A stretch of DNA of 64,000 bases from Pristiophorus japonicus (taxonomy: Eukaryota), in assembly GCF_044704955.1 (NCBI RefSeq), contig NC_091987.1, forward strand, positions 69,006,001 through 69,070,000. The letters run 5' to 3'. This document shows, one piece after another, positions 4,081 through 43,624 of the stretch. Numbering within the stretch: position 1 is the first letter of the stretch; every line of letters starts with the position of its first letter. The notes beneath the pieces were generated by a model. The model saw only the letters and a list, made by a program, of their open reading frames with translations. It ran no database searches and had not been told where the DNA came from. A program made the translations under genes and the position numbers.

Positions 4081-6233
4081 AACATAGAAACATAGAAAAT
4101 AGGTGCAGGAGTAGGCCATTCGGCCCTTCTAGCCTGCACCGCCATTCAATGAGTTCATGGCTGAACATTCAACTTCAGTACCCCATTCCTGCTTTCTCGC
4201 CATACCCCTTGATCCCCCTAGTAGTAAGGACCTCATCTAACTCCTTTTTGAATATATTTAGTGAATTGGCCTCAACAACTTTCTGTGGTAGAGAATTCCA
4301 CAGGTTCACCACTCTCTGGGTGAAGAAGTTCCTCCGCATCTCGGTCCTAAATGGCTTACCCCTTATCCTTAGACTGTGACCTCTGGTTCTGGACTTCCCC
4401 AACATTGGGAACATTCTTCCTGCATCTAACCTGTCTAACCCCGTCAGAATTTTAAATGTTTCTATGAGGTCCCCTCTCAATCTTCTGAACTCCAGTGAAT
4501 ACAAGCCCAGTTGATCCAGTCTTTCTTGATAGGTCAGTCCCGCCATCCCAGGAATCAGTCTGGTGAACCTTCGCTGCACTCCCTCAATAGCAAGAATGTC
4601 CTTCCTCAGGTTAGGAGACCAAAACTGTACACAATACTCCAGGTGTGGCCTCACCAATGCCCTGTACAACTGTAGCAACACCTCCCTGCCCCTGTACTCA
4701 AATCCCCTTGCTATGAAGGCCAACATGCCATTTGCTTTCTTAACCGCCTGCTGCACCTGCATGCCAACCTTCAATGACTGATGTACCATGACACCCAGGT
4801 CTCTTTGCACCTCCCCTTTTCCTAATCTGTCACCATTCAGATAATAGTCTGTCTCTCTGTTTTTACCACCAAAGTGGATAACCTCACATTTATCCACATT
4901 ATACTTCATCTGCCATGCATTTGCCCACTCACCTAACCTATCCAAGTCGCTCTGCAGCCTCACAGCATCCTCCTCGCAGCTCACACTGCCACCCAACTTA
5001 GTGTCATCCGCAAATTTGGAGATACTACATTTAATCCCCTCATCTAAATCATTAATGTACAGTGTAAACAGCTGGGGCCCCAGCACAGAACCTTGCGGTA
5101 CCCCACTAGTCACTGCCTGCCATTCTGAAAAGTACCCATTTACTCCTACTCTTTGCTTCCTGTCTGACAACCAGTTCTCAATCCATGTCAGTACACTACC
5201 CCCAATCCCATGTGCTCTAACTTTGCACATCAATCTCTTGTGTGGGACCTTGTCGAACGCCTTCTGAAAGTCCAAATATACCACATCAACTGGTTCTCCC
5301 TTGTCCACTCTACTGGAAACATCCTCAAAAAATTCCAGAAGATTTGTCAAGCATGATTTCCCTTTCACAAATCCATGCTGACTTGGACCTATCATGTCAC
5401 CTCTTTCCAAATGCACTGCTATGACATCCTTAATAATTGATTCCATCATTTTACCCACTACCGATGTCAGGCTGACCGGTCTATAATTCCCTGCTTTCTC
5501 TCTCCCTCCTTTTTTAAAAAGTGGGGTTACATTGGCTACCCTCCACTCCATAGGAACTGATCCAGAGTCAATGGAATGTTGGAAAATGACTGTCAACGCA
5601 TCCACTATTTCCAAGGCCACCTCCTTAAGTACTCTGGGATGCAGTCCATCAGGCCCTGGGGATTTATCGGCCTTCAATCCCATCAATTTCCCCAACACAA
5701 TTTCCCGGCTAATAAGGATTTCCCTCAGTTCCTCCTCCTTACTAGACCCCCCGACCCCTTTTATAACCGGAAGGTTGTTCGTGTCCTCCTTCGTGAATAC
5801 CGAACCAAAGTACTTGTTCAATTGGTCCGCCATTTCTTTGTTCCCCGTTATGACTTCCCCTGATTCTGACTGCAGGGGACCTACGTTTGTCTTTACTAAC
5901 CTTTTTCTCTTTACATATCTATAGAAACTTTTGCAATCCGTCTTAATGTTCCCTGCAAGCTTCTTCTCGTACTCCATTTTCCCTGCCCTAATCAAACCCT
6001 TTGTCCTCCTCTGCTGAGTTCTAAATTTCTCCCAGTCCCCAGGTTCGCTACTATTTCTGGCCAATTTGTATGCCACTTCCTTGGCTTTAATACTATCCCT
6101 GATTTCCCTTGATAGCCACGGTTGAGCCACCTTCCCTTTTTTATTTCTATGCCAGACAGGAATGTACAATTGTTGTCGTTCATCCATGCGGTCTCTAAAT
6201 GTCTGCCATTGCCCATCCACAGTCAACCCCTTA
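4081..6233 (-). mobile_element. Young 5'-truncated CR1 LINE
   Basis: TSD AGTTAGA at 4074-4080 and 6234-6240. (ttctatgt)n tail at 4081-4098. Uninterrupted ORF2. Confidence 0.95.
4175..6226 (-). CDS. CR1 ORF2, reverse transcriptase portion (683 aa, no endonuclease)
   Basis: RT motifs [21 protein letters not shown] and KFADDTKL, with no stops or frameshifts. Confidence 0.9.
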   Translation of the reverse strand: MTVDGQWQTFRDRMDERQQLYIPVWHRNKKGKVAQPWLSREIRDSIKAKEVAYKLARNSSEPGDWEKFRTQQRRTKGLIRAGKMEYEKKLAGNIKTDCKSFYRYVKRKRLVKTNVGPLQSESGEVITGNKEMADQLNKYFGSVFTKEDTNNLPVIKGVGGSSKEEELREILISREIVLGKLMGLKADKSPGPDGLHPRVLKEVALEIVDALTVIFQHSIDSGSVPMEWRVANVTPLFKKGGREKAGNYRPVSLTSVVGKMMESIIKDVIAVHLERGDMIGPSQHGFVKGKSCLTNLLEFFEDVSSRVDKGEPVDVVYLDFQKAFDKVPHKRLMCKVRAHGIGGSVLTWIENWLSDRKQRVGVNGYFSEWQAVTSGVPQGSVLGPQLFTLYINDLDEGIKCSISKFADDTKLGGSVSCEEDAVRLQSDLDRLGEWANAWQMKYNVDKCEVIHFGGKNRETDYYLNGDRLGKGEVQRDLGVMVHQSLKVGMQVQQAVKKANGMLAFIARGFEYRGREVLLQLYRALVRPHLEYCVQFWSPNLRKDILAIEGVQRRFTRLIPGMAGLTYQERLDQLGLYSLEFRRLRGDLIETFKILTGLDRLDAGRMFPMLGKSRTRGHSLRIRGKPFRTEMRRNFFTQRVVNLWNSLPQKVVEANSLNIFKKELDEVLTTRGIKGYGEKAGMGY

Positions 6234-8508: not shown

Positions 8509-11195
8509 TAGAATCATAGAATTGTATAGCACAGAAGGCAGTCAGTCCGTTGGGTCTGTGCCGACTCTGTTGAAGAGCAATCCAGGTAGTTCCACTCCAT
8601 GCTGTTCTTTCATCTTATTCAAGTATTTATCCAATTCCCTTTAGAAGGCTACTATTGAATCTTCCTCCACCACCAGCAGATAGTGCACTCTAAATCCTAA
8701 TCATTCGTTGCATAAAAAGTTTTTCTTCATGTCGCCTCTGGTTCTTTTGCCAATCACTTTAAATCTGTGTCCTCTGGTTATCAACCCTTCAGCCATTGGA
8801 AACAATTTATCTTTATTTACTCTATCTAAATCCTTCATGACTTTAAATACCTCTATCAAATCTCCTCTTAAGCCTCCCTTGCTCAAAGGAGAACAACCCC
8901 AGCTTCTCTAGTCTATCCACGTAACTGCAATCCTTCATCCCTAATACCATTCTAGTAAATCTCTTCTGTGTCCTCTGCAAAGCCTTCAAATCCTTCATAA
9001 CGTGTGGTGTCTAGAATTTGACACAATACTCCAAATGGGGCCAAACTAGTATTTTTTATTGGTTTAGCATAACTTCCTTGCTTTTGTACTCTGTGCCTCT
9101 ATTTATAAAGCCCTAGGATCCCATATGCTTTATTAATTGCTTTGTTAATCTGTCCTGCTACCTTCAAAGATTTGTACATAAGCACCCCCAAGTCTCTGTT
9201 CTTGAACCCCCTTTAAAGTGTAGCATTTAGCTGGTATTGCCTCTCCTCATTCCTCCTACCAAAATGTATCACCTAACACTTTTTTGCATTGAATTTCATC
9301 TGCCATGTGTCCACTCATTCCACTAACCCGTCTAAGTCCTCTTGCAGTCTATTACTATCTTCCTTACTGTTTACTACACTTCTAAGTTTCGTTTCATTGG
9401 CAAATTTCAAAATCGTGTCCTGTACCCCCAAGTACAAGTCATTAATGTATATCAAAAACAGCAGCGGTACTAGTACTGAACCTTGGGGAACTCCACTGTA
9501 TGCCTCCCACAAGTCTGAAAACAGCCATTCACCACAACACTGTTGCGCCAGCCTTTATAAATGGCCGCCTTCGACCTTACAAAGGCCTTTGACATTGTCA
9601 ATCACGAGGGTCCATGGAGCGTCCTCTTCCATTTCGGACACCCCAAAAGTATGTGGCCATCCTCCACCTGCTCCACGATGATAGGAAGGCCATGATCCTT
9701 ACCAACAGATCCATCACAGACCCCATCCACGTCCGGACCGGGGTCAAACAGGGCTGCATCATCGCCCCAACCCTCTTCTCAATCTTCCTTACTGCCATGC
9801 TCCACCTCACAGTCGGCAAGCTTCCCGCTGGAGTGGAACTAAACTACAGAACCAGTGGGAACCTGTTCAACCTTCGCCGTCTCCAGGCCAGATCCAAGAC
9901 CACTCCAACCTGTGTCGTCGAGCTGCAATACGCAGGCGACACCTGCATCTGAACACATACAGAGGCTGAACTCCAGGACATAGTCGACGTATTTACTGAG
10001 GCGTACGAAAGCATGGGCCTTACACTAAACATCAGTAAGACAAAGGTCCTCCACCAGCCTGTCCTCGCCGCACAACGCTGCCCCCCAGTCATCAAGATCC
10101 ACGACGAGGCCCTGGACAACATGGACCACTTCCCTTATCTTGGGAGCCTCCTATCAACAAGAGCAGGCATTGATGATGAGATCCAACACCGCCTCCAGTG
10201 AACCAGTGCAGCCTTCAGCCGCCTGAGGAAAAGAGTGTTTGAAGACAAGGCCCTCAAAACTGTCACCAAGCTCATGGTCTACAGGGCTGTAGTAATACCA
10301 GCCCTCCTGTATTGCTCAGAAACATGGACCATGTACAGCAGACACCTCAAGTTGCTGGAGAAATACCACCAACGATGTCTCCTCAAGATCCTACAAGTCC
10401 CCTGGGAGGGCAGACGTACCAACGTTGGCGTCCTCGTCCAGGCCAACATCCACAGCATTGAAGCACTGACCACACTTGATCAGCTCCGCTGGGCAGGCCA
10501 CATCGTTCACAGGCCAGACACGAGACTCCCAAAGCAAGTGCTCTATTCTGAACTTTTTCACAGCAAATGAGCCAAAGATGGGCAGCAGAAACGTTACAAG
10601 GACACCCTCAAAGCCTCCCTGATAAAGTGCGACATCCCTACTGACACCTGGGTGTACCTGGCCAAAGACCGCCCTAAGGGGAGGAAGTGCATCCGGGAGG
10701 GCGCTGAGCTCCCCGAGTATCGTCGCTGAGCGCATGCAGAAATCAAGCAGGGAGCAGAAAGAGCGTGCGGCAAACCAGTCCCACCCATCCCTTTCCTCAA
10801 CGTCTATTTGTCCCACCTGTGACAGAGACTGTGGCTCTCATATTGGACTGCTCAGCCACTTAAGAACTCATGTTAAGAATGGAAGCAAGTCTTCCTCGAT
10901 TCCGAGGGACTGCCGATGATGATGATGTTTTCTATCAGCCAATTTTCTATCCATGCTGCTACTGCCCGTTTTAGCCCATGTGCTTCAATTTTGCCAACAC
11001 ACTAATTATGTGCTACTTTTATCAAATGCCTTTTGGAAGTCTATATACATATCAACTGCACTGATCTCATCCACTCTGTTACCTCATCAAAACACTCAAT
11101 CAAGTTAGCCAAACATGATTTGCCCTTAAATCCATGTTGGCTCTCCTTTATTAGTACATGCTTGTCCAAGTGGCTGTTAATTTTCTCTGTTGTAC
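8509..11195 (-). mobile_element. Older CR1 LINE, interrupted by an RTE
   Basis: Reversed ttctatga-type tail at ~8509-8521. CR1 ORF remnants at 8701-8886 and 9315-9512 (GVPQGSVL). Resumes after 10927. Confidence 0.85.
9544..10927 (+). mobile_element. RTE (BovB-like) LINE, 5'-truncated
   Basis: RTE RT motifs GVKQGCIIAPTLF and LQYAGD, C-terminal CPTC...H zinc finger, (tga)n tail at 10917-10927. Confidence 0.9.
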
Positions 11196-11424
11196 AGACT
11201 ACTCGACCTGATTAACTCTCACTACAGTAATCTATCCTTAAATTGAACTGTAGCACTGGTTACATCTAATAAAATGTGTTTAACAATTTTATCTCCTATG
11301 CCTGACCCAAATACTTACTTTTCCACTTATGCATCAAACATTCATGTTTAGCATTCCACTGGCTGGATGTGGAGAAACTGGGAGTAGTGAGCTGTGGGAT
11401 TTATTCCCTCTGTGAACAACTTAC

Positions 11425-11544
11425 CTCACCGAAACTTTTCCTCACTGATCTTTTGACTGTAAGGTGTTGAACCTGGCAGGTGATGGCGGTTTCCAGGTCC
11501 CAGTGAATGTCTGTAATCCGCAGCCGGGAGCTCAGGTTGTAGGA
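11425..11544 (-). pseudogene. C-terminal half of an Ig C1-set domain exon
   Basis: The minus strand reads SYNLSSRLRITDIHWDLETAITCQVQHLTVKRSVRKSFGE, with the C1 hallmarks Y-x-x-x-S-x-L, W and T-C-x-V-x-H. It is followed by donors G|GTGAGG (phase 1) and GAG|GTAAGT. The N-terminal half is not recognisable. Confidence 0.65.
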
Positions 11545-12155
11545 TTAAATTAATCCAAGTTACAGCAAATGGAGAGAGAGCAACTGTGGGTTAAAGTTCT
11601 GGATATTTGATACCAAATGGGAAACTAAATAATTAGATTAGATTATGTCTCAACATACAAATCACAAGATACATATAATAAAATATAACATATGTACCCA
11701 AATGAAAAACGAGCCAGAATAATATCCCGTGATTTTACAATAAGTTTCATTCGGGTACAAATTCCCTTTGTTTTTATTTGGACCAATATCAAGAAAATTG
11801 AAATAAAATGACGATGCTTGTTTCACAAACCAGATTGCAATTCGCTTGTTATATAAATAATATTCCGCTGTTACTATAGAATCTTACAGCCCATCTTGCC
11901 TGTCCCGGCTTTGTGAAAGAGCTATCCAATAGTCCCACTCCTTTGCTCTTTCCTGCATTTTTTTCTTTTCAAGCATTTATCCAATATTGGTCTCCGCATT
12001 GTATGATTTTGTCTTTCTTCAAACGAAGGTTTTAAAAATTATATGAAAATCCTACTGTTTAATGGATATTGTGGAATTAAAGTTAAACGCTGGTGTATTC
12101 AGTCCAGTCCCCAGTGCACCGAGCATGTCAGTCCCAGATTAGATATGTGTGTATG

Positions 12156-12851
12156 TGCGGTGGGCTTGGAGCATCGTGGGCCCCCAACTGCGAGAGAACA
12201 TCTCCCACAGGTCGGGCTATAAAAGAACTGGAGCGGCATACGACCACAACTTCCAGCGTGAGCTGACATAAATGGGTGATGTCATCAGGACCCAGGTCAC
12301 TGTTTGGAGCATGGGCAGGAGTATCGGTGGGGCCCTGGTAAAGCAGAGGAGCGGGAAGGTCATGGCAGAAGTGCAGCGAGTGATCGAGGCGGAGGAGCGG
12401 CGCGAGATCGTGGTTGAGGTTCGGGGAATGTTTGGTGCGGAGGGGCAGCGAGTGTTTTGTGGCGGAGGAGCAGTGAGAGATCGTGGCGGAGGAGCGGCGC
12501 GAGATCGTGGCGGAGGTGCGGCAAATGAGGGTACGGGGCCCAAAAGTTCTGAGGGCCCAGGAGCAGCACGGGCCAGCCCACAGTGCGATATGTGTGCACA
12601 CTAGGTCCATGCAGCAGAGCAGGTCTCCAGTCGCCTTGGTTAACCCTTGCCACTGGATAAAGGCCTAACTCTGTCAAGCCCATGTGGTGGCTGATGTGCA
12701 ACGGTCACCACACATGAAAAAAATCCATGCACAGGCATCTTCTACCCTTTTAACTGGAGTTCAGGACTGAAATATCGGGTCCTTCATTGAAACATGTGTG
12801 AACTCATGTGGAAGCAATTCATCTTGTTCGAGGGAGCCCCTATGATGATGA
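12156..12851 (+). mobile_element. Bipartite non-autonomous RTE-related element (SINE-like) with internal 24-bp repeats
   Basis: TSD TGTGTATG at 12148-12155 and 12852-12859. RTE-type cctatgatgatga tail. Repeats of ggcggaggagcggcgcgagatcgt at ~12388-12515. Homologous to 61166-61675 and 41541-41794. Confidence 0.8.
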
Positions 12852-12921
12852 TGTGTATGGAGCTATTCCTGATTCCTTTCCCCATACATTGAACTATTTC
12901 AGTTTTGGTTAATCTAATTAC

Positions 12922-13258
12922 CTTGGATGTTCAGTTCTGTTCCCTCTCCTGTTAAATGTTTCCAGGACTGAGGATTCTCTCTCAAAACCAGGCAGTGGTT
13001 AATGTCCGAATCGTCCACAATCACCTGCCGAATAACAAGCAAGCCCTCCAATACAGATAGACACACGAGAGTTTTTATTGAGAAAATTCCTAATTTTGTT
13101 ACTTCTGATGTCAGGATTGTCTCTTGTCCTAAGCCAGCAATATCTCTCCGAACCCACCCGCTCCTCACGGGATAACGGGGTACAGTTGATCAGAGCTGTC
13201 TGTCCTCTCAGGAAGGACAGAGCTGAAGGAGACTGGATCCAGAGCTGGATTAAGAATT
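12922..13258 (-). pseudogene. Ig V-set exon with a germline-joined J-like motif (frameshifted)
   Basis: Two overlapping minus ORFs join to give IQSPSALSFLRGQTALINC...YCWLR...RVSI/...LLVIRQVIVDDSDINHCLV...TGEGTELNIQ. Cys at 13182-13184 and 12992-12994, core Trp, a D-S-x-x-x-x-C motif, GxGTxL, and a phase-1 donor CAAG|GTAATT at 12921. The length of 337 nt fits one frameshift in a phase 1-1 exon. Confidence 0.75.
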
Positions 13259-13314: not shown

Positions 13315-13412
13315 TCAAGAAAAGAAAGAATTTCCCGGCCACCGGACGTCTCAAAGCGCTTTACAGCCAATGAAGTAGTTTTTGGAGTGCAGTCACTGTT
13401 GTAATGTAGGAA
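13315..13412 (-). mobile_element. DeuSINE/L2-type 3' tail fragment
   Basis: caaagcgctttacagccaatgaagta...gtcactgttgtaatgtaggaa is the reverse complement of the tail of the SINE at 59048-59437. Confidence 0.65.
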
Positions 13413-13418
13413 CCACTA

Positions 13419-14004
13419 ACTGGTCTGTAATTTACCATCTAATTTCCTGGTACAAAATGTATGTCTGAGAAAGACTGAAAATCTATGGTCTTGCCCTGAT
13501 CTTCTCTTTGGCATCTTTCAACAGACCAGTGTGCATGGCACCGGGGCCCAGTGACATATCCACCGAGTTTTGATTATTTGTTCAGAACCAATTCCTTTTC
13601 CCAGCTCCCCAACAATTCCTGCATCATGTGTAAAAAGCCTTTTATTTACTATATCTCCACCATATCCATTCTCCACCACTAGACTCCCTGCTCTCCCTTT
13701 AACTGTTTTTACTTACAATAATGAAAACCCTACTTCCTTTTAAATTATCGGCTAACCTTTTTCTTGTATAATCCCGTTTAGCCCTTTAGATCTCCCTCTT
13801 CAGCTCCCCACTTCACTTTCTACATTCCTCCGGATTTTCTTCAGTAATATAAACCCTAATTTATCACTCGCCTCAGTTTAAGTTTCAATTTTTAATCAGA
13901 GATTATGGTTCTCGTATTGGACTGTACAGCCACCTAAGAACTCAGGCTAAGAGTGGAAGCAAGTCTTCCTCGATTCCGAGGGACTGCCTATGATGATGAT
14001 GATG
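13419..14004 (+). mobile_element. Chimeric insertion: ~490 bp of decayed CR1-like DNA plus a ~100 bp RTE 3' end
   Basis: 13-bp direct repeat GTAGGAACCACTA at 13406-13418 and 14005-14017. RTE 3' end and (tga)n tail at ~13906-14004. Confidence 0.65.
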
Positions 14005-16027: not shown

Positions 16028-17405
16028 GAGCTTGTAGGTGTGTAAAACACCCACAATGGTTTTCAAATTGCCATCTACCTGAAACGTGTAACAAACTGTT
16101 CAAAGAGATGACATGACATATTAGCATGCATTTGGCATCTCACTGAGCTCTCGCTTTTTAAAAGTAGAATTCTCATCTGATGTTTTAAAAGAAATAGAGT
16201 AAAGTACCCCCAGGAAAAATGAAAAAGAACTTCATTCTGAAGTAGCATAAAATTATCCAGATAGTCTACGTAATTAACTTTTGCAGAAATCTTGGAGCAC
16301 ACTATTCTTAGGTGCATTCAGAACTATCCAAACTACCCAAAACCTTCTCAACATGATGACAATGTTCTTTTAGGACATCAGTTTTTGAAAACTGCAGCAA
16401 CATATTGCACAAAGTTTAAAATTATAAAACACTAGCACATTTTCTCCTAGGTGGAAACTAAACAGATAAAATCATTGCAATCCATTATTATCCCTCAACA
16501 TTTTGTAATACCTACAACTATATATTTTAATAAGGATAATGGATTTCTTAAGTCCAAGAAAACTAATGGAACTTGCAAAATGAGGAATTCCAAATGCCAC
16601 CTGAGCTATGATCCGATTGGTTTGAAATGTTGATGTGCATAATAGATACTTTTCATATTTTGCTATTTAAGCCATTTAAATATTGTATGTCTTTACCTTT
16701 CAAACAGTATTTTGTGTTAGTAACTCGAAACAATATTGAAAGGGTTGTATTTCGGTTGATTAGAGTTCCTACAGGCTTCAGTTAGTTAAGATGTTGTGTA
16801 AGATTAGGATCTTACGCACTTTCAGAACAATTTCACACACATACCCAAGGGGGTCTTAGAAGTTATAAGGCACTTTTATTAAGGGAGCGGTAGTTCAAAT
16901 ATAGTCAAACACAACACACAATCAGGATAGACATAGTAGCTGTTATTAGTCCTGATCGGACAGGCGCCTGATGACACGAACAGTTCTTATCTTCACAGTC
17001 TGCGCTGAAAAGCACTTTAGACGTCTTTTTCATTGTCGTTTTAAGGGTGGGCCTGGCGGAGGGAGCCCCATGGCCTTTCAAGTTCTTTATCTCCACACTC
17101 AGGTGAAACCCTCCCCTTCACATGCCTTTCATGTTTATGCTTTCTGAAAATCCATCTCCCACAGTTGGAGTCAGACATGCCTTCAGATGTTTGGAGCTGC
17201 CTGTAATCAGCTATTTAAGTTCACGCTGTTCAAGTCGCTTTAGCTATTGTACCATGGAATGAATCTTTTAATTCTAACACCAGAGACTTTTTGGTCTCAA
17301 GTAATTTCTTCCAATTTACGATTTCTTACAGTTGGAAACTGACACACCAGGTTTCTCAAAGGAGTGTTTTTGCCACTCTCATGTGGCTCAGCAGGGAGAG
17401 GAGAT

Positions 17406-20091: not shown

Positions 20092-21037
20092 GGAACAGGA
20101 GTAGGCCATCTAGCCCCTTGTGCCTGCTCCGCCACTCAACAAGATCATGGCTGATCTGGCCGTGGACTCAGCTCCACTTACCCGCCCGCTCCCCATAAGC
20201 CTCAACTCCCTTATTGGTTAAAAATCTATCTACCTGTGATTTGAATACATTCAATGAGCTCGCCTCAACTGCTTCCCTGGGCAGAGAACTCCACAGATTC
20301 ACAATCCTCTGGGAGAAGGAATTCCTTCTCAACTTGGTTTTAAATTGGCTCCCCTGTATTTTGAGTCTGTGCCCCCTAGTTCTAGTCTCCCTGACCAGTG
20401 GAAACAACCTCTCTGCCTCTATCTTGTCTATCCCTTTTACTATTTTAAATGTTTCTATAAGATCACCCCTCATCCTTCTGAACTCCAACGAATAAAGACT
20501 CAGTCTACTCAATCTATCATCATAAGGTAACCCCCTCATCTCCGGAATCAGCCTAGTGAATCGTCTCTGTATCCCCTCCAAAGCTATTATATCCTTCCTT
20601 AAGTAAGGTGACCAAAACTGCACGCAGTACTCCAGGTGCAGCCTCACCAATACTCTGTACAGTTGCAGCAGGACCTCCCTGCTTTTGTACTTCATCCCTC
20701 TCGCAATGAAGGCCAACATTCCATTCGCCTTCCTGATCACCTGCAAACTAACTTTTTGGGATTCATGCACAAGGACCCCCAGGTCCCTCTGCATCACAGC
20801 ATGTTGTAATTTCTCCTCATTCAAATAATATTCCCTTTTACTGTTTTTTTTTCCAAGGTGGATGACCTCGCATTTTCTGACATTGTATTCCATCTGCCAA
20901 ACCTTAGCCCATTCGCTTAACCTATCTAAATATCTTTGCAGCCTCTCTATGTCCTCTATACAACCCGCTTTCCCACTAATCTTTGTGTCATCTGCAAATT
21001 TTGTTACACTACACTCTGTCCCCTCTTCCAGGTCATC

Positions 21038-21388
21038 TGTTAGATCTCTTAATTTCCAATGAAATACGAACTCCGATTGTAGTTTTAATGTCACTTTATT
21101 TTGGCTGCAATAACAAGCTCTTGGCTTTAAGCCAGGTCTTTGTCCTTCTGATATCACATGGCCAAAATGGCTGTATTTATACCGGGTTCAATTTACAGAA
21201 AAGAACTCGCCTTCTTTCACCTTATTGGCTCAATTAATAGTCTTTTCACCTTTTAATTGGCTCGCTACCCAAGATCCTAAAATGTCAAGTTGATTGATGA
21301 TTTAATGCAACATGCTGAACTGCATGTAGACATGGGAGTCTGTGTTTTCTCAACCTGTCTAAATGCAGCCTGTTTGAATTCTCTATCA
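21038..21388 (-). promoter_or_regulatory. ERV 3' LTR (351 bp)
   Basis: TG...CA termini. PPT aaagggggg immediately upstream (21391-21399). On the minus strand: two CCAAT boxes (~21224, ~21256), TATAAA (~21176-21181) and AATAAA (21095-21100). Confidence 0.85.
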
Positions 21389-21726
21389 ATCCCCCCTTTG
21401 ATACTTTCACAAACTGAATCATAAAACATCAGGTATCACCGGTTAAACATTCTACAAAATAATTTCATACATGTTAATAGAGTTTCCTTCTAAAATTTGT
21501 TGATGTGTTTCACCACATGTCCGGATTAGTAGCTGCCACACAAATTCACATCAACTCGAGTTCCATCGTGGCCACAATGGAAGTCTGGTTTTCGTAGGTT
21601 AATTAACCTTATTCCAATTTAATCCAAATCAATATCTTAATTCAACCAGTAAACAACCTTTCCTTCAGCATAACATACCCCTGTGCCACGTACAGATGGT
21701 CTGCTGGGACCTGCAAGGTGTCTCAC

Positions 21727-23016
21727 CTACTGGACAGCAGCTACAGCCGCCTGGTCGTAACAACATTTAATCAACATAAACAAACAATATAAAAGTAAAA
21801 TAATTACAACAAATAGGATTAAACCTTCCACCAATGAAGTTCCTATTGAACCTAGCCATTCAGTGGCTCCACTCCACAAAGTGAATGATGGGGGTTGCTT
21901 AAGTTTTTCTACCTCCTTTTGGATATGCTCCGCTAAGTGGGTAATTTCTTCGGAACTATCTGGGATATATGTGCAACACTCAGTTCCGAGTAGGGCGCAA
22001 GTACCTCCCTTTTCAGCCAGGATGTAATCAAGGGCCAGTCTATTCTGTAGGGGTACTGTGCGGATTGCTACCATTTCTGCATTGATTTTAACTAGGGCCT
22101 CTGAGGTATCATTGGCTACCCGTTCCACAATGGATGCCATGTTAATGGATTCCCTTGCCAGTCTGGCGGTCCCATACCTAGGGATCAGAATGGCAACGAA
22201 CCTCTCTATTTCTGTGATAGCTCTCTTAGGATGGTGTAAATGTTCCGACAGTGACTTTATATGATATATATAAGGCACAATGTAGGCTAAATAGCAGGAT
22301 CACGACCAATTCTGAGGCAGTCAAGGTTAGGTCTTGTGGCCACACACCCAATAGGTGCCATTATATGTAATGAAGGTTAGCTGTTGCTTTGTCAGCAACA
22401 CTCCGGGGCCTGTCCAGGCTTTTCCATCTGTTTTATTCAGAATTCCCATTACGTTAAAAATTCCCACATCGACCCAGTTTGGACAGTTCCGTGGCTTGAT
22501 TATATTATAATTCCGGGAGCAGTTACTATACCCCATATTTTGGCCTCCTTTGATATTTCTAATCAGACAAACCGATTCCCCCGGTCTTCCTATTCCCGTT
22601 GTATTAGTGATAACAAAAAATGGAGGCCGTTTGGAATTATTGTAACATGGTTGGTATCCCCCTTCAAAGGTAGTCAGATTGTAACCTGCTGACTTCCATT
22701 TACGCGCCCAGTTTTCCATATCCTGAAATGCCTTGCCTGTTTTGTTTTGATTAATTATCCACTCAGCCATTTCCGAGATATTCAAGGGAACTGGCCTCAA
22801 GGGAATCCCTCCCTTTGAGTGAATAGAAATATGCGCGCACACCCAACAACTAGAAATGTTACCTTGTTTGGCATAAATGTATGACATATATAAAAAGGTA
22901 TTTACATGTAATTCCCTTGCTACTCTACTATTTCCCTTTGGTGCAGAGAGTCGGCTAGTAAGAAGTAGGCCTATGCCTAGAATACCTACAGTCAGTAATA
23001 CAGTAAATTTATACAT
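21727..23016 (-). pseudogene. env: ERV env, gamma-type (three in-frame stops at 22300-22329)
   Basis: Signal peptide, CWVC (CxxC), basic cleavage site PKR/AI, immunosuppressive domain LQNRLALDYILAEKGGTC, CX6CC (CALLGTECC) and a TM helix. The two ORFs share one frame. Confidence 0.92.
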
Positions 23017-23040
23017 TTTGGCAAAAAGTAATTGTCCTTA

Positions 23041-25116
23041 TTAGATTTCAGCTTCAGTTACGGGTGCTCGTTTAACGTGTGAAGCGTGGATCCAGGCTTT
23101 CTTTCCTTGGACTTTAACAGCTGCCCGGGTGGTCAATAACACTTGATAAGGTCCCTCCCACTTGGCACCCAAAGGTTCTTTATGCAACTTTTTCACATAC
23201 AACCAGACTCCCAGGATGATGTCGTGTCCTCCTTTGGGTGGATTACCCCAAGCTGCCGATACCTGTTGGGAAACAGAACTAATAGCATTGGTTAAGTTCT
23301 GACAGTATGATAACAAAGTGTCACTCATTAAGTGAACATCAGCTTTCCGTAAATCGATAGTTCCTGGCAGCGATATGGGTCTTCCTGTTATAATTTCAAA
23401 TGGACTTAGACCTGTAGCTCTGTTCGGGGTTGCCCTAATACTACATAGCACTATTGGTAATGCCTGGGGCCATGGTGTTCCTTTTTGGTGATATTTGGCA
23501 AGCTGTTGTTTCAGAGTTCGATTCATTCGCTCTACTTGTCCTGATGATTGTGGATGATAAGGACAATGTAAATCCCACGTAATGTTCAGTAATCTACAGA
23601 CTTCTTGGCAGACAGCACCTGTGAAGTGTGTTCCCTGATCTGAGTCAATGCTACTCGGGACTCCCCATCGGGGAATGTAATCCTTACAGAAGACCTTTGC
23701 AGTGTGATTGGCTGTGTGTCCTTCTGCTATTCGACATGCTTCTGACAGGGCCCGTAACTCGGCCTGCTGTGCTGACGTTCCGGAGGGTAAACATCCTTTT
23801 GCCACTATGTCATATAAGGTTGTAACTGCCCATCCTGCTTTTCTGGTACCATTGTCAACAAAGGAGGAACCATCTGTAAACAAGATGAGGTCTGGGTTGT
23901 GCAGAGACTCCTCTGCTGCTAAGGCTGCTTTTTCTGTTTCTTTTAAAATCTCCACGCAGTCATGCTCTTCACATTCTCCCCCCTCTTGCTCCCTCGATTC
24001 TGACATCGGGAGCATAGTTGCGGTATTAATCGGGCTGGCCCGGACAATATGGAGATTAGGAGCTTCCAAAACTGCTGTCCAGCGGGTCCATCTAGCTGCC
24101 GTCACCTGAGACATTCTATTCATAGACAGCAAAACATGTACAGTGTGGGGACACTTGACAATCAGCTTTTGTTCGAGGACTAGACCCGCAGTGATCATTA
24201 CCGCTCGACATGTAGCTTCCATAGCCCTTAGGCAACTTCCCCATCCGAGGGCTACCGCATCCAGTTTTGCCGAATAATAGCTAATAGGTCTTTGCCGATC
24301 CCCATGTTCTTGTGTCAGTATAGCAGTCATATATCCTTCTTTCTCATGGACAAACAGGGTAAATGGCTTACCACTGTCGGGGATTCCCAGAGCCGGTGCC
24401 GAACACAAAGCCTTTTTCAAACTCAGGAAGGCCTCTTGCTGTTCCTTAGTGAGGGTGATGGCTTCTTTAGAGGCACGTTTCCCCTTTAAGATATCATTCA
24501 ATGGCTGAGCAAGCTGTGTGAAGGAGTCAATCCAATTTCTGTTAAAGTTACACAATCCCAAAAAAGACCTTAGTTCCTGAATAGTGGTGGGTTTTTTAGC
24601 AGCCCGAATGGCTGCAGTTCTATCCTGGGTAAGTTCTCTCTTTCCTTGTGAAATCTTTTGTCCCAGGTATACAACCTCTTCTTGGGATATTTGTGCTTTG
24701 TCGATGCTGGCTTTATGTCCTTTCAGCCGAAGGTGGTCCAGCAAAGCTCGTAAATCTTGTTCATGCTGGTCTTCCGTGTTTGAAGCTAGCAGGATATCGT
24801 CTACATTTTGGATGACTGTGGATGACAGGGGAGATAATTCTCGCAAATGACTTTGTAAAGCCATGTGGAATACCGTAGGGCTGTTGTGGAAACCCTGTGG
24901 TAACCGGGTCCAAGTATACTGTTGTCCTTCGACCGTGAAAGCAAACCACTGTCGAACCTTCGGTGCCAGAGGCACCGACCAAAATCCGTTGGCCATATCT
25001 ATAACCGAGAAATATTTATGTTCCGGTTTGAGGGCATTAAAAATGGTGGAGGGATCTGCGACCAAAGGAGCTTTTTGATCAATACACTGGTTAGCTTTCC
25101 TATAATCGACAGTCAA
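23041..25116 (-). pseudogene. pol: ERV pol (RT, RNase H fused to integrase core; internally deleted)
   Basis: IDMANGFWSVP, LPQGFHNSP, NVDD in place of YVDD, FTDGSS...SAQQAEL, integrase DSDQGTHF...SSGQVERMN and a GPY motif. Confidence 0.92.
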
Positions 25117-25750
25117 ACGCCAAGTCTCATTAGATTTCTGTACTGGCTACACGGGGCTATTGGAGGAGCTATGCGTTTTAATAAGCAGCCCTGTTTCTCC
25201 AATTGCTGAATAACCGGTAAGATTCCCGCAATGGCAGTTGGACTGATGGGATACTGTTTAGTGCATGGAGGCTTGGTCCCGGTAAATGACGCAGGCTCCA
25301 TCTGGAGTAGGCCACAATCGTTCTTATTTTTAGCCCATATCAGTTGTTCCTTCAATTCTTCTTTCTTCAAAGTTCTAATTGACCATGTCACCCGACCATC
25401 CTCGAAATGCAACGATGAATCTACTTGGATTAAAACGTCCATTCTCAAAAGGGGTTGATCTACTGGGCCTATCCAGACTGGCGTGGTTAGTTCATGTGGA
25501 CCCAGCCCTATAAGTACCGGTGTTGTCCTTTTAATTTCCATTTTATGGCCCCCAACTCCATAGGCTGTATGTGCCCTACCATCCAACACAAAAAGTCTCC
25601 ATACTGTAGGGGTAAGCATGTTAATTCCGCCCCTGTGTCTAAAAGACAGTCCACATCCTTATCGCCCACCCTCACAGTTATATATAGCCCATCTCCCCTT
25701 TGTTGTATTAGTGCGAGGAGGTGGACCAGGGTGGGCTCTAATCGTTTTTT
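25113..25750 (-). pseudogene. pro: ERV protease and RT N-terminus (frameshifted)
   Basis: The -1 frame relative to gag reads ...VDCLLDTGAELTCLP, then shifts frame near 25590 into GVGG...QPLLRMDVL...KQYPI. Confidence 0.85.
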
Positions 25751-27302
25751 GCTATCCCAAGTAACTCCTTCTGTTGTTGTATTGTCAGTTGCTTAAATGC
25801 TTCTATGAGGTCGTTATTTTGTGACCAGTCTGGTTTGTTGGCTGAATTGTATCCCTGGCTGCGTCCTCTTCTCCGGCCACGACCTTGCTGTTTTGTCCTG
25901 CACGTCTTGGCCCAGTGACCTTCTTTCCCACAATAATGACATTTTCCGGCTAATTTTCCTAATAACTGTTTATCGGAATCCTGGGATTTCCATCCCATAG
26001 CCTGTACAGCTCGGACTTTAGCTCCCATATCCCGATCTAATTGGTTACATCGATCCACCAATGCTGCAAAGGTAGTTCCTCTACCTTCCCAGTCCGGTAA
26101 CACTACCTTAAGCATTTTGGACAGTTCTGGCTTTAGACCTGCCACGAAAGCTGCTTTCGGGGGTCCAAACACTTGTTCATCCATTTCCTCATCCGTATTA
26201 TTCATACCCGAATGTTCTAGCCACGTGCATCTAAACCGCTCGTCATACTCCAGGACCTCCTCTGTTCCTTTCTGTTGGCAGGCTGCAATTTTTCCCCAGT
26301 CTGTCTTAGCTGGACTGAAGGCTTGCAGCCAGTGTTTAATCGCCTCCCATCCTGCTTCTAATTCTTGCTCATCCTGCCCCAAAGTTTCTTCTACCTTGTC
26401 GTGCAATTTTCTTCCCTGTGTTTTTGGCACCATTATGGTCAAAATTTGCACTCCGTCCCAGGGATGAAGTTGATATATATTTCTTAAGCGGTCCAATTGG
26501 TCCCACGTTTTCACTCCCCCTTTCTTTGGATTGGGCAATTCCTTGGACCATTTATCAATTTTCTCTGGGTCTGCCGGATCATGAACTAAGTATTTTGCAT
26601 ACAGCCTTTTCTTCGTTTTTTTGGTTCCGCCTTCATCTGCAGTTTCTTCTGATTTGACTACAACACATCTTTTTTTTTAAACGGGGCAAAGCGCACCCCT
26701 AATTCTTCATCCTCCGATCCTGTATCGTCGGAGGATTCAGAATCCGTATCTATTCCTCGGTCGTGTCTTCGTGTTTGCGCTTTTAATTTATCCAAACATG
26801 GGTACCCTGGGAATTGACCGATACATTTTCCTTTTCCTATTACTGTCTCTGGACCAAATGATTTTTTCCATTCTTTAATTTCACCTTTAAGATCTTTAAC
26901 TTCCGCTTCCGACTTTTCAAGGTCAAGTTTTTTCTGTCGGAGCTGTTCACAAACAGCTTGCAATTGGTCCTTTTTACTGGTCAGTTCTCGATCATGTTGG
27001 GAACGCATTATAATTTCATTCCGCTTTCGAATCTGTCCCATAACCGCTAGGGACCATCTGATTCGCTCTTTATTTTTCATACGGGTTGTTTTTCCCCAGA
27101 CCCTTTTAATCTCGTCCAAGGACCATTGTCCTTTGGAGGTACCGTATTTTTGTTCGATCTTAATACAGGTTTTAGATAAATTGAATTGTTGCTCTATGTA
27201 TTCTTTCAACTGTTCGAGAATTTCATCTAGCGAAACCTCAGGTGGTGCCAGCCCATCTTTAACAGTTGTAGGCAATTCTTTGCTCTTATCTCCTGCTGCC
27301 AT
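25738..27302 (-). pseudogene. gag: ERV gag (split into two ORFs)
   Basis: Coiled-coil-rich N-terminal part (26658-27302). The capsid/NC part has a single CCHC knuckle CHYCGKEGHWAKTC and an RG-rich tail. Confidence 0.85.
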
Positions 27303-40481: not shown

Positions 40482-40960
40482 ATGTCAGAGAATCAGGAAA
40501 CGTTGGGAAATAACTCTGCTAAAACTGCTGCACCGCCCTCGACAAGTTCAGAATCTCTGCGGAGCTGCAGGACAAAGTGTTTGGTTTGTAAAAACTTTTA
40601 CACCGATCCGAAGATCTTGCCTTGCCTGCACACGTTCTGTCTGGGCTGTGTGAGCGGCTTGGAGCAGTTCTCTGTCCCTCGCACTCAGAGGGAGGTTGAG
40701 TGTGGATCTGGGGGATCATTAGATTGCTCCGAGCCCGGGGCCTCTATCCTGTGCCCAGTCTGTGACTGTGAGGTGCATGTACCGGCTGCTGGAGCGCCAG
40801 GGCTGACTAGTAACCATCTGATTCAGAATGAGGTTTTACTGGAGAGTCTGAAGAGACCCGACTACAGGTTAGTCTGTGATCTTTGTAACGATGGAAATGC
40901 TGAAAGAAGGTGTCACATCTGTTCAGCAAATCTCTGTGACTTCTGCTCCAAAGCACACAG
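40482..40960 (+). CDS. TRIM45: TRIM45 coding exon 1 (RING and B-box 1)
   Basis: RING CLVC...LPCLHTFCLGC...CPVC and B-box CDLC...CHIC...LCDFC...H. Donor AG|GTAAGA at 40961 (phase 2). Confidence 0.88.
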
Positions 40961-41094
40961 GTAAGACTCTGGACTAGTGATTAGGATTTTATTGGTTCCC
41001 CTTGTATGCATCTTCAAAGCTTTATTTATTGTGTGCAATGATTCTAGTGAACTATACCATTGTAGGAAAGAGATCTAATTTTTTAAAATTATTC

Positions 41095-41820
41095 GATAAC
41101 AGGTTGTGGGCATCGCTGGCAAGGCCAGCATTTATTGCCCATTCCTAATTGCCCTTGAGAAGTGGGTGGTGAGCCGCTGCCTTGAACCGCTGCAGTCCTT
41201 GTGGTGAAGTTACTCCCATGGTGCTGACTTTGTCACAGCCATTTGTTACAACGAAGTGGCTTGCTAGGCCATTTCAGAGGGCAGTTAAGAGTCAACCACA
41301 TTGCTGTGGGTCTGGAGTCACGTATAGGCCAGACTGGGCAAGGATGCCAGATTTCCTTCCCTAAAGGACTTTAGTGAATCAGATAGGTTTTTATGACAAT
41401 CCAGTCGTTTCTGGTCACCATTACTGATACTAGCTTTTTAAAATTCCAGATTAAAAAAAAAATCACCTGAATTTAAATCCCCCAGCTGTGTGGTGAGATT
41501 TGAACTCTCGTCTCTGGATTACTAGTCCTGTATCATAACCCTCACTCACAGGCAGTCCCTCAAAACAAGGATGACTTGCTTCCATGCCAAAAAAGGATGA
41601 GTTCACAGGTGTTTCTATGAAGGACCTGAATTACATCCTGAAGGGTGGAAGATGCCTGTGCGTGAATTTTAAAAAAAAAATGTGTGGTGGCCGTTGCACA
41701 CCAGCCACCACACGGGCTTGACAGAGCTAGGTCTTGGTCCAGTGGCAAGGATTACCCAAGACGACTGGAGACCAGTTCTGCTGCACGGACCTAACATAAC
41801 CACAATGCTTCTGTACCCCC
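41095..41820 (-). mobile_element. tRNA-headed SINE-like element with a CR1-type tail (split by 41541-41794)
   Basis: The minus strand begins ggggtacagaagcattgtggttatg...gagttcaaatc (A/B-box-like) and ends gggcaataaatgctggccttgccagcgatgcccac. Confidence 0.6.
41541..41794 (-). mobile_element. 5'-truncated bipartite RTE-related element
   Basis: Reverse complement of the 3' half of 12156-12851. TSD CATAACC at 41534-41540 and 41795-41801. Confidence 0.78.
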
Positions 41821-42020
41821 TATAGATGTCACTTCATTATAATATTTTATGTCCTGACATATAATGTAATTAAATAAGGGTAAGATTATTAAGTAAGCTG
41901 CACTTTTCAAACTGATATGAGGCATAGCCACTTTACAATTAAATTAATCTAGTTAAAACTGAAAATAACCATGGTTGGTGCTCATCAGTTTTTAAGCTGT
42001 AAAACTCATCATTCCTGCAG

Positions 42021-42757
42021 GAGGCAGAGGATGACTGCTTCTCACAACACAGTGGCCCTGAAGGAGCTACAAGGTGGAACTGAGAGAATGGTGAAGCCCA
42101 TCATGTGCTCTGCTCATCATGCAGAGGAACTGAGACTATTTTGTGAGACATGTGATCGTTTGGTCTGCAGGGATTGTTGCATGGTGGATCATCGTGACCA
42201 TAACTGTGACTTTATTGCTACTGTCATCAACAAACATGGCAGTTTCATCAGGGAGCTTCTGAAGCAAGCACAGCCACACATTGGTGCATTGCAGGAGACT
42301 TTGCAAAAGATTGGCAATACTCGGCAGCTAGTACATGAGCGGCTGAGAGTGATAACTGAAGAAATTAATAGTTTTACAGAGGATTATATCCGGGCTTTAG
42401 AGAAACATCGGAACAGACTTTTGAAAGAGCTGGAAGAGTTGAGAGTCCAGAAGGAGGATTCCCTGTATCTGCAGCAGATCCAGTTGGAACAGGTCCTGGC
42501 GGATATGAAGACTGGAGTGGATTTCACCGAGCACTTGCTGACCAGTGGGTCTCATGCGGAAATCCTACTAACCAAATGTGTGGTAGTCAACCGACTGAAA
42601 CAGCTGAATAAGGTTAGTTACAGCACGCACCCTGGAGAGGATGATGGGATATGGTTCCAACCGCAGGAGAGAGCAGGACAGTGCGATGGGGTTGAGGTGT
42701 TCGGAATCATTGTCACAAAGGCAGTTGATCCCAGCAAGTGTGTTCTTCAGGGTGAAG
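42021..42757 (+). CDS. TRIM45: TRIM45 coding exon 2 (B-box 2, coiled coil, filamin start)
   Basis: Acceptor ttcctgcag| at 42020. CSAHHAEELRLFCETCDRLVCRDC...HRDHNC, a coiled coil, and VDPSKCVLQGE. Donor G|GTAAGA at 42758 (phase 1). Confidence 0.9.
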
Positions 42758-43624
42758 GTAAGAGAGAAAGACAAACTTAACTTTTCAAGTATTGAATTTC
42801 TTTAAAGTTTTTGAATTATTTATGCATCTCCCGTAGATTTGGTTGTGCTGTGAGGGTTGGAGGCCTCGGTGCAAGTGGCAGAGTGGGGTTGTGGCAGAGT
42901 AGAAAGGGAGTGCCAAGTATGAGGTGAGGGCCGTCAATTGGGAGGTCTATGATAGAGAACAACAGGCAATGCTGGTGGTTACAGGGTGGTAACATGCTGA
43001 AGGTGTTATGAAGGTAAGTTATGACGACCTTGGTGTTCCACATTTGCTGGGTAGCTGTGTACTATCATGATGGAAGGAAAAAGGAGTATCATGTTGTTCA
43101 CAGTAGAAACACAAATCACTGGATTCAATCAGAAAATCTGGACAGGAGCCAACATTTCAACACTCAGAAAGCCAATGCCTAAGGCTGCAGACACAAACAT
43201 TATATTTTGATAAATATGTCGGATCTGAGGGCCTGGGTTGAAATCTTGTATGATGGCGCCTGTCATTTCACTTTACTGTTTATGGAGGATAATGCATATT
43301 TTTATAGTTAACTTTATGTAAAGTCATGAAACAATAGGAGACATACTGATAGAAAAAGTTCGAGACACCGAGTGTATGAATGGTCAAAGGGGTAGGCAGG
43401 TGGAAAGGGAAACATGGAAATCTGGCAAAGTGGAGCAGGCACCACTACCACAGGAAAACAAACAAAGTAAAATACTGTAAATAAAAACACAAAATTCTAG
43501 AAACACTCAGCTGGTCAGGCAGCATCTGTGGAGAGAGGGAGGTTGATGATCTATCATCAGAGCCAGGTTCCGCTGAACATTTTCTGTTTTTATTCCATTG
43601 GCACAGGATCTTGGTAGAAGAAAA

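What the first reader, a model, noticed from the sequence alone, without database searches (positions are those of the whole stretch)
11425..13258. Hidden remnant of a germline-joined VJ plus C1 immunoglobulin-superfamily gene, divergent from TRIM45
Seen: a frameshifted V-set exon with both Cys, the core Trp and a J-like GEGTELNI end running straight into a phase-1 donor, with no RSS between V and J. About 1.4 kb downstream on the same strand is a C1-set half-domain (SYNLSSRL...W...TCQVQH) ending in a splice donor, which implies a further exon, possibly TM. Known: C1 domains are largely confined to Ig, TCR, MHC, tapasin, SIRP and B7-H6. Non-rearranging VJ-C1 genes (PRARP/VJC1-type) and NKp30-like VJ genes are discussed as relatives of antigen-receptor precursors. 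Mammalian TRIM45 lies in an IgSF-rich neighbourhood (VTCN1, CD101, CD2/CD58). Inference: this is a pseudogenised member of a possibly unannotated non-rearranging VJ-C1 receptor family, and intact paralogues or orthologues may exist.
Basis: partly seen in the sequence, partly recalled or inferred. Interest (0 to 1): 0.82.

Follow-up and report, generated by a model that had tools for sequence, protein, structure and literature searches.

The report
Dead copy of shark SIRP-like receptor
This is a broken, partly deleted leftover copy of a shark immune-receptor gene (one antibody-like V domain plus one C1 domain) from a large family of working genes in sharks and rays, so it is real but ordinary.

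Summary
On the minus strand lie a V exon with a fused J-like end (12922-13258; one frameshift near 13044-13058; phase-1 donor) and, 1.38 kb downstream, the last 40% of a C1 exon (11431-11544).

It is not an Ig light-chain remnant. All three pieces match one elasmobranch family of leader-V(J)-C1-TM receptors at 55-79% identity. RefSeq predicts this family in at least 13 sharks and rays under contradictory automatic names: SIRP-beta-1-like, PTPNS1-like, Ig kappa-like, TCR-beta-like. Members come as inhibitory forms (ITIM-like tail) and activating forms (arginine in the membrane span). SIRP-alpha is the closest solved structure.

The window copy is dead:
- frameshift in V;
- 4 of 29 family-invariant residues changed, including Tyr to Asn in the YxC motif;
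- first ~60 C1 codons absent;
- no leader, TM or tail exon found anywhere in the 64 kb;
- SINE and LINE insertions on both sides.

A paralogue about 92% identical over the C1 piece exists in the same genome.

The scan had already found this family on other DNA of this genome, including an intact copy reported 0.8 kb left of this window.

The parts
12922..13258 (-). V exon with germline-fused J-like end (GEGTELNIQ). Phase-1 donor G|GTAATT at 12922/12921. Acceptor AG at 13260-13259 (an alternative AG lies at 13262-13261).
   Evidence: sequence. (tblastn against family proteins, E 1e-19 to 1e-29). (family V HMM: 83.8 and 54.9 bits in two frames). (no RSS heptamer).
13044..13058 (-). Frameshift zone in the V exon. 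Frame 1 (..SRVSI) passes to frame 2 (..EGLLVIRQV), a net +1 base relative to family proteins.
   Evidence: Frame 1 stops matching after RVSI, and frame 2 matches EGSLVIREV of Heptranchias P0018.
12977..12997 (-). DSDINHC: the family-invariant DSDTYHC with Thr changed to Ile and Tyr to Asn (the YxC tyrosine of V domains).
   Evidence: 4 of 29 family-invariant columns are changed in the window copy; intact members change 0-2, apart from long-branched Narcine (5 of 34).
11431..11544 (-). 3' part of the C1 exon (E, F and G strands): SYNLSSRLRITDIHWDLETAITCQVQHLTVKRSVRKSF. Homology to the family starts abruptly at 11544.
   Evidence: Pfam C1-set positions 57-84, 19.7 bits. (79% identity to Heterodontus P0014, 63% to Scyliorhinus P0002). 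(frameshift-aware alignment does not extend upstream). (64.7 bits).
11419..11430 (-). Exon end and donor, GGTGAG|GTAAGT. It is about 7 nt shorter than a paralogue in the same genome, which reads ..KSFSNSG G|GTAAGT (phase 1). At the GTAAGT the window copy is in phase 0; an alternative G|GTGAGG donor would keep phase 1.
   Evidence: tables 3, 4 and 8: paralogous contig over 11389-11543 with 9 substitutions and 7 inserted letters at 11428-11430..
11545..12921 (-). V-C1 intron remnant. 11545-12150 is single-copy DNA with no trace of the first ~60 C1 codons. About 12150-12860 is a very high-copy interspersed repeat.
   Evidence: alignment score equals shuffled DNA. (C1 5'-half HMM finds nothing). 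(copies at 61407-61660 and 41597-41793). table 2 (depth 1e4-1e6).
13330..13480 (-). SINE copy about 70 nt 5' of the V exon, in the place of the leader intron. It is followed by a G-rich run.
   Evidence: copy at 46583-46646. (depth above 1e5; loose ends continue as the SINE consensus)..
8800..11190 (.). LINE reverse-transcriptase fragments that begin about 230 nt 3' of the C1 piece, where a TM exon would be expected. A minus-strand RT fragment is interrupted by a plus-strand RTE-type element.
   Evidence: ORFs with SQHGF..KSCL.NL and YSELFHSK motifs. (no TM or tail exon anywhere in the window).
40482..42780 (+). First two coding exons of the neighbouring TRIM45-like gene (RING/B-box, B-box2 and coiled coil). 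It is divergent from the remnant and 27 kb away.
   Evidence: (best PDB match human TRIM45 8sdi, E 1.3e-18).

Best explanation
The stretch is a non-functional, partly deleted duplicate (pseudogene fragment) of an elasmobranch SIRP-like paired-receptor gene.

Working members of the family encode, from separate exons:
- a leader;
- a non-rearranging V domain whose exon already contains the J-like strand (G-x-G-T-x-L-N-I/V-Q);
- one C1-set domain (two in some rays);
- a membrane span;
- either a long tail with ITIM/ITSM-like tyrosines (inhibitory form), or a span with an arginine and a short tail (activating form).

By analogy with SIRP-alpha/beta, such pairs would signal through SHP phosphatases or a DAP12-like adaptor. 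That step is inferred, not shown.

The window copy keeps only the V exon and the last 38 codons of the C1 exon. Its state:
- one frameshift in V;
- substitutions at four invariant positions;
- an internal deletion that removed the C1 acceptor and its first ~60 codons;
- a ~7-nt shortening at the C1 3' end;
- no detectable leader, TM or tail exon;
- SINE and LINE insertions on both sides.

It cannot make a receptor. It records birth-and-death turnover of the family next to TRIM45.
For: - Family found with V piece A alone: P0001 E 1.3e-14 (60% identity), P0002 1.1e-12, P0004 and P0008.
- All three window pieces align to the same proteins in the right order: V about 55-69%, C1 piece 63-79% identity.
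- Family HMMs: E 1e-24, 1e-15 and 1e-18.
- Family proteins pass Pfam: C1-set 50-63 bits; V-set 37-41 bits in two of three scanned, 25.5 against the 26 cut-off in P0002.
- They occur in 13 species.
- Inhibitory tails carry LHYASV / EYAVL / IYASL. Activating forms P0011, P0015 and P0016 have Arg in the TM.
- Missing parts: C1 5' half; leader; TM and tails.
- Relaxed constraint: 4 of 29 invariant columns changed against 0-2 in intact members other than long-branched Narcine (5 of 34). The end branch is 0.33 against a median of 0.099, inside the shark clade at 99/99 support.
- Paralogue in the same genome: a contig about 92% identical over 11389-11543, with an assembly branch exactly at 11543/11544. 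The V exon is single-copy at 90% or more.
- Three small runs of unknown library type have no contig on either exon.
Against: - Absence of the leader, TM and tail exons rests on protein-level searches of 64 kb. A 16-codon leader is hard to detect, and exons could lie left of the window start.
- The frameshift and the deletion are seen in the assembly and in contigs of a DNA run that may be the same sample, so independent confirmation is lacking.
- The runs without coverage are not known to be RNA, so silence is not shown.
The deletion breakpoints and the age of the duplication are therefore inferred from contig tables only.
Confidence: 0.9

Rival explanations
1. It is a pseudogenised germline-joined Ig light-chain cluster (VJ plus C) of the cartilaginous-fish type.
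For: - Against PDB, the C1 piece alone matches kappa light-chain C termini best (E 2e-4). Read through the donor, it gives KSFGEVSC, which resembles KSFNRGEC.
- V piece A weakly resembles VL.
- Shark light-chain clusters can be germline-joined (PMC2193156, PMC2192082, listed).
Against: - The same pieces match membrane receptors with TM and ITIM tails far better: 63-79% identity and E down to 1e-29.
- In those proteins the C1 exon is followed by a TM exon, and a paralogue in this genome reads KSFSNSG G|GTAAGT with a phase-1 donor.
- Among solved structures the family profile's best single stretch is SIRP-alpha at 71.4 bits, against 46.7 for lambda.
Confidence: 0.02
2. It is a still-used gene or exon set, for example an alternative V exon or a short secreted product of the neighbouring intact receptor gene, and the lesions are assembly errors or are tolerated.
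For: - Both exon remnants keep good splice signals.
- An alternative G|GTGAGG donor would keep phase 1 (reasoning).
- RefSeq predicts short or odd isoforms in the family: P0020, P0022, P0026.
- An intact copy is reported 0.8 kb left of the window (unchecked note).
Against: - The frameshift sits in the middle of the V domain, and an exact contig confirms it (record 8).
- The structural Tyr of YxC is lost.
- The C1 acceptor and the A-D strands, including the first Cys, are gone.
- The small runs have no contigs on the exons.
Confidence: 0.05
3. It is a relic of a distinct, older VJ-C1 lineage (UrIg/UrIg2-like or antigen-receptor precursor-like), not a recent dead copy of the SIRP-like family.
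For: - UrIg2 V-C1-C2-C3 (9dmx) is the top whole-chain PDB hit of the family profile, E 4e-33.
- The remnant has a long branch.
- By my own knowledge of the human map, TTF2-TRIM45 lies at 1p13, an MHC-paralogous region.
Against: - The UrIg2 rank comes from summing three C1 domains. Its best stretch is 58.6 bits, below SIRP-alpha at 71.4.
- The remnant sits inside the shark clade of the family with 99/99 support and is 70% identical to the Heterodontus and Heptranchias members.
- A paralogue about 92% identical over the C1 piece exists in the same genome.
Confidence: 0.03

Closest known systems
Elasmobranch 'SIRP-like' V-C1 paired receptors. These are RefSeq predictions only, e.g. XP_051870356/7 and XP_051869794 (Pristis pectinata), XP_038658211 (Scyliorhinus canicula), XP_059824346/7 (Hypanus sabinus), and the Heterodontus francisci and Heptranchias perlo 'Ig kappa light chain-like' models.
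   Same: The V(J) exon has the same motifs (IQSPS.L..LRGQTA.INC, YYW.R.RDNP, LVIRE..V.DSDTYHC, G.GTELNIQ) and the same phase-1 donor. The C1 end is the same (TYNLSSRLRITD..TC.V.H..SF). Identity is 55-79%.
   Different: The window copy is frameshifted and lacks the first ~60 C1 codons. No leader, TM or tail exon was found. It has changed 4 invariant residues.
Mammalian SIRP-alpha/beta/gamma (PDB 2wng, 4i2x)
   Same: - V domain with a J-like GxGTELSV strand running into AKP and a C1-set domain.
- Paired ITIM-tailed and charged-TM forms.
- Best single-stretch match of the family profile among solved structures: 71.4 bits, E 6e-19.
- A squirrel SIRP-alpha is the only non-elasmobranch hit of the word search, E 6e-16 at 24% identity.
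   Different: - One C1 domain instead of two in most members.
- Only about 24% identity.
- CD47 binding is unknown.
UrIg / UrIg2, non-rearranging shark VJ-C1 antibody-like genes (PMC12227049; PDB 9dmx)
   Same: Non-rearranging single-exon VJ followed by C1 domains, and restricted to elasmobranchs. The family profile matches UrIg2 V-C1 at 58.6 bits.
   Different: UrIg2 is V-C1-C2-C3 and dimerises like an Fc, and it is linked to the Ig/TCR complex. The present family is V-C1-TM with signalling tails. The match is weaker than to SIRP-alpha.
Germline-joined Ig light-chain clusters of sharks and skates (PMC2193156, PMC2192082)
   Same: VJ fused in the germline and a C1 exon 1-3 kb downstream on the same strand. 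The C1 piece alone resembles the C-kappa end.
   Different: There is no light-chain-type C terminus in the family. The C1 exon splices on to a TM exon, and the closest proteins are membrane receptors.
NKp30 (NCR3) and other VJ-only receptors
   Same: A non-rearranging V exon with a J-like strand.
   Different: NKp30 has no C1 domain. It did not appear among the hits of any search here.

Membership tests
Elasmobranch SIRP-like V-C1 receptor family (database-predicted, unnamed) | V-set exon with fused J-like strand G-x-G-T-x-L-x-I/V-Q and a phase-1 donor | tested here: met
   GEGTELNIQ then G|GTAATT at 12922. Family V HMM 83.8 + 54.9 bits. No RSS heptamer.
Elasmobranch SIRP-like V-C1 receptor family (database-predicted, unnamed) | C1-set domain with ..LTC.AAGFFP.DL.ISW.. 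and ..TYNLSSRL..TC.V.H..SF | tested here: inconclusive
   The second half is present at 63-79% identity. The first half, including the first Cys and the Trp, is absent. It is a member by descent, not an intact domain.
Elasmobranch SIRP-like V-C1 receptor family (database-predicted, unnamed) | Membrane span plus either an ITIM-type tail or an Arg-bearing span | tested here: not met
   No TM, inhibitory-tail or activating-TM exon anywhere in the 64 kb. This is expected for a truncated pseudogene.
Elasmobranch SIRP-like V-C1 receptor family (database-predicted, unnamed) | Groups with family members in a tree | tested here: met
   Inside the shark clade at 99/99, on a long end branch of 0.33. No outgroup was included.
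SIRP family proper (SIRP-alpha/beta/gamma orthologues) | V(J)-C1-C1 ectodomain closest in sequence to SIRP | tested here: inconclusive
   The family profile's best single PDB stretch is SIRP-alpha at 71.4 bits, but identity is only about 24%. Most members have one C1 domain. No tree with SIRPs was built.
SIRP family proper (SIRP-alpha/beta/gamma orthologues) | Conserved synteny with the tetrapod SIRP cluster | not testable with these tools
   The window shows TRIM45 as neighbour. Human SIRPs are on 20p13 and TRIM45/TTF2 on 1p13 (my own knowledge).
SIRP family proper (SIRP-alpha/beta/gamma orthologues) | Binds CD47, recruits SHP-1/2 or pairs with DAP12 | not testable with these tools
   Only sequence motifs were seen: xxYxxL/V tyrosines and a TM Arg.
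Cartilaginous-fish Ig light chain (germline-joined cluster) | C domain ends the protein (C-terminal Cys, stop in the C exon), with no TM exon | tested here: not met
   Family proteins continue into TM and tail. The same-genome paralogue has a phase-1 donor after KSFSNSG.
Cartilaginous-fish Ig light chain (germline-joined cluster) | V and C closest to the kappa, lambda, sigma or sigma-cart isotypes | tested here: not met
   The best relatives are SIRP-like receptors at 55-79% identity. Light chains reach only E 2e-4 to 1 on the pieces.
UrIg / UrIg2 | V-C1-C2-C3 secreted or dimeric architecture, MHC or AgRC linkage | tested here: not met
   The family architecture is V-C1-TM. The UrIg2 match of 58.6 bits is below SIRP-alpha. 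The locus is next to TRIM45.

The most novel reading that the evidence does not exclude
That lineage would be sister to tetrapod SIRPs and related to the UrIg/UrIg2-type antigen-receptor relatives. This remnant would then document birth-and-death turnover at the ancestral site, giving a third genomic anchor for the VJ-C1 precursor question.
Probability: 0.12. Interest if true: 0.55.

Novelty: new member of a known kind. Interest (0 to 1): 0.2.

Why it matters
The remnant matters little by itself. It is one dead copy in a multigene family that turns over by duplication, deletion and transposon insertion.

Its use is as a marker. It shows that the TRIM45 neighbourhood of this shark holds more than one copy of a V(J)-C1 paired-receptor family. 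Databases label that family inconsistently, and no paper I could search describes it.

The family combines a single-exon VJ, a true C1 domain and SIRP-style inhibitory and activating signalling. That makes it relevant to how antigen-receptor-like domains were used before or beside V(D)J recombination. That question is better studied on the intact members than on this fragment.

Tried and rejected
1. Ig light-chain reading, my first guess from the KSF....C tail. Rejected after the family was found.
2. Word-index protein search with the V ORF: no hit. This says nothing, because of its length and word limits.
3. Hunt for the missing first half of the C1 exon.
   - Frameshift-aware alignment over 11545-12925 scored no better than shuffled DNA.
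   - A tblastn hit at 17231-17398 (+), E 0.019 with ray queries, looked like the missing half. It scored only 6.7 bits (E 0.85) with the family HMM, no better than three unrelated segments at 7.5-8.0 bits. Rejected as chance.
   - 'AVTW' just upstream of the C1 piece in another frame is also not supported.
4. Leader exon search 3.7 kb upstream: nothing.
5. TM, tail and activating-TM HMMs: nothing.
6. Other V or C1 copies in the window: none.
7. Literature search for 'PRARP' returned only urology papers. One search failed on a term under three letters.
The pieces were searched apart by reference. Only inside a script were the aligned columns of the three pieces placed in one row, for the tree and the invariant-column count.
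Full report
**What is there**

The feature lies on the minus strand.

The V exon begins after cagAG at 13258. An alternative AG lies two bases upstream.
- Frame 1 reads ..IQSPSALSFLRGQTALINCTPLSREERVGSERYCWLRTRDNPDIRSNKIRNFLNKNSRVSI.
- The frame slips by one base between about 13058 and 13044.
- Frame 2 continues EGLLVIRQVIVDDSDINHCLVLRENPQSWKHLTGEGTELNIQ.
- The exon ends CAA G|GTAATT, so its last base is 12922 and the donor is in phase 1.
- Both domain cysteines, the core Trp and a J-like G-x-G-T-x-L strand are present.
- No RSS heptamer lies in the exon.

The C1 piece starts 1,377 nt further on.
- 11544-11431 reads SYNLSSRLRITDIHWDLETAITCQVQHLTVKRSVRKSF, followed by GGTGAG|GTAAGT.
- A TAA codon directly precedes the S of SYNL in that frame.

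**Generic profiles on the fragments**

Pfam scores the fragments below its cut-offs:
- V-set 15 bits, E 0.03, first half only;
- nothing for the second V half;
- C1-set 19.7 bits, E 0.0011, profile positions 57-84.

Against solved structures, the C1 piece resembles kappa C termini best (E 2e-4). The V pieces resemble VL or TCR V only weakly. At that point I favoured a dead germline-joined light-chain cluster.

**What it belongs to**

- The word-index search with the V ORF found nothing.
- The exhaustive HMMER search with V piece A alone found P0001 (E 1.3e-14, 60% identity), P0002, P0004 and P0008.
- These proteins have a leader, V(J), one or two C1 domains, a TM and a tail.
- Their C1 domains end TYNLSSRL(R/Q)(I/V)TD...TC.V.H...SF. 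V and the C1 piece thus belong to one gene type.

tblastn of 17 family proteins on the window hits only the three pieces, in the right order. The best E-values are 1e-29 (Cetorhinus, V) and 1e-14 (Heterodontus, C1 piece, 79% identity). HMMs built from 13 members give 83.8, 54.9 and 64.7 bits on the six-frame window.

**The family**

Two further searches list members in 13 species: Pristis, two Mobula, Hypanus, Hemitrygon, Narcine, Heterodontus, Heptranchias, Hemiscyllium, Stegostoma, Scyliorhinus, Mustelus and Cetorhinus.

RefSeq's automatic names contradict each other:
- SIRP beta-1-like;
- tyrosine-protein phosphatase non-receptor type substrate 1-like;
- Ig kappa light chain-like;
- TCR beta chain-like;
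- Ig heavy chain Mem5-like;
- uncharacterized.

Properties of the members:
- Intact members pass Pfam for C1-set (50-63 bits). Two of the three scanned pass V-set (37-41 bits); P0002 scores 25.5 against a cut-off of 26.
- Long forms carry LHYASV, EYAVL and IYASL-type tyrosine motifs.
- Short forms (P0011, P0015, P0016) have an arginine in the membrane span and almost the same ectodomain as the long form of the same or a related species. This is the paired-receptor pattern.

Among solved structures, the family profile's best single stretch is SIRP-alpha d1-d2 (71.4 bits). It is ahead of UrIg2 V-C1 (58.6) and a lambda chain (46.7). UrIg2 tops the whole-chain list only because three C1 domains add up.

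I found no paper describing the family. UrIg, UrIg2 and NKp30 are the VJ genes discussed in the recent literature.

**Why this copy is dead**

1. There is a frameshift inside the V domain.
2. Four of 29 family-invariant columns are changed: Leu to Phe, Leu to Pro, Thr to Ile, and the YxC Tyr to Asn. Intact members change 0-2, except long-branched Narcine at 5 of 34. The end branch is 0.33 against a median of 0.099.
3. Homology to the C1 exon starts abruptly at 11544.
   - A frameshift-aware alignment does not extend upstream.
   - The whole 11545-12925 interval scores like shuffled DNA against the first ~60 C1 codons.
   - The C1 5'-half HMM finds nothing in the window.
4. No leader, TM, inhibitory-tail or activating-TM exon is found in the 64 kb.
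5. A SINE sits about 70 nt 5' of the V exon. A very high-copy repeat fills 12150-12860. LINE fragments begin about 230 nt 3' of the C1 piece.

**Evidence from sequencing runs**

- In a DNA run of the same organism, the V exon is covered by one exact contig at unique depth.
- The region 11300-11870 carries a second set of contigs with differences.
- One of these (11389-11543) differs at 9 positions and has 7 extra letters just after the KSF codons.
- Applying those differences gives SYNLSSRLRITDTRWDSGTAITCQVQHLTVKGSVRKSF, then SNSG and G|GTAAGT. This is the family's normal phase-1 exon end.
- That contig ends at 11543, and the exact window contig starts at 11514.
- I infer that this is the k-1 overlap of an assembly branch, and that the paralogue diverges from the window copy exactly where the C1 homology stops. 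That fits an internal deletion in the window copy.
- Three small runs of unknown library type have contigs only on the repeats, none on the exons. This is compatible with silence but does not prove it.

**Context**

- ORFs at 40482-40964 and 41971-42780 (+) are the first exons of a TRIM gene whose best solved match is human TRIM45 (E 1.3e-18).
- The remnant is divergent from it, 27 kb away, with an endogenous retrovirus and LINEs between.
- Earlier notes of this scan, which I did not check, report an intact activating copy just left of the window, an intact inhibitory copy about 75 kb to the right, and many more copies elsewhere in the genome.

**Verdict**

The family is already computer-predicted in many elasmobranchs and has been met repeatedly by this scan. 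This copy is a truncated pseudogene.

**Limits**

- No outgroup tree was built.

Noticed in passing
window 21038-27525 (minus strand ORFs 26658-27302, 25738-26538, 25113-25619, 23041-25116, 22327-23016, 21727-22278): An endogenous retrovirus with long gag-, protease-, pol- and env-like ORFs lies between the remnant and TRIM45. I only observed it.
   Followed up: no
window 4175-6226 (-), 36290-37486 (+), 51589-52497 (-), 20168-21157 (-): Several copies of one LINE family, the longest with a 683-aa open RT ORF. This suggests recent activity in this genome.
   Followed up: no
P0022 (Mobula birostris, 221 aa) and P0026 (Stegostoma tigrinum isoform X3): The tail of P0022 (PELPAAGERLP...) is an out-of-frame reading of the YNLSSRLR part of the C1 exon. 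P0026 skips the first part of the C1 exon. Lesions or alternative junctions inside the C1 exon thus recur in the family, one of them close to the break seen in the window.
   Followed up: partly
window 12363-12424 and 12460-12521: An internal 62-nt direct duplication (85% identity) inside the high-copy intron repeat. Contigs of several runs show variable joints there.
   Followed up: no
P0010 / P0011 (Pristis), P0012 / P0016 (Hypanus / Hemitrygon): Inhibitory and activating forms of the same or a related species have nearly identical ectodomains and cluster together in the tree. This suggests homogenisation or very recent duplication of paired receptors.
   Followed up: partly
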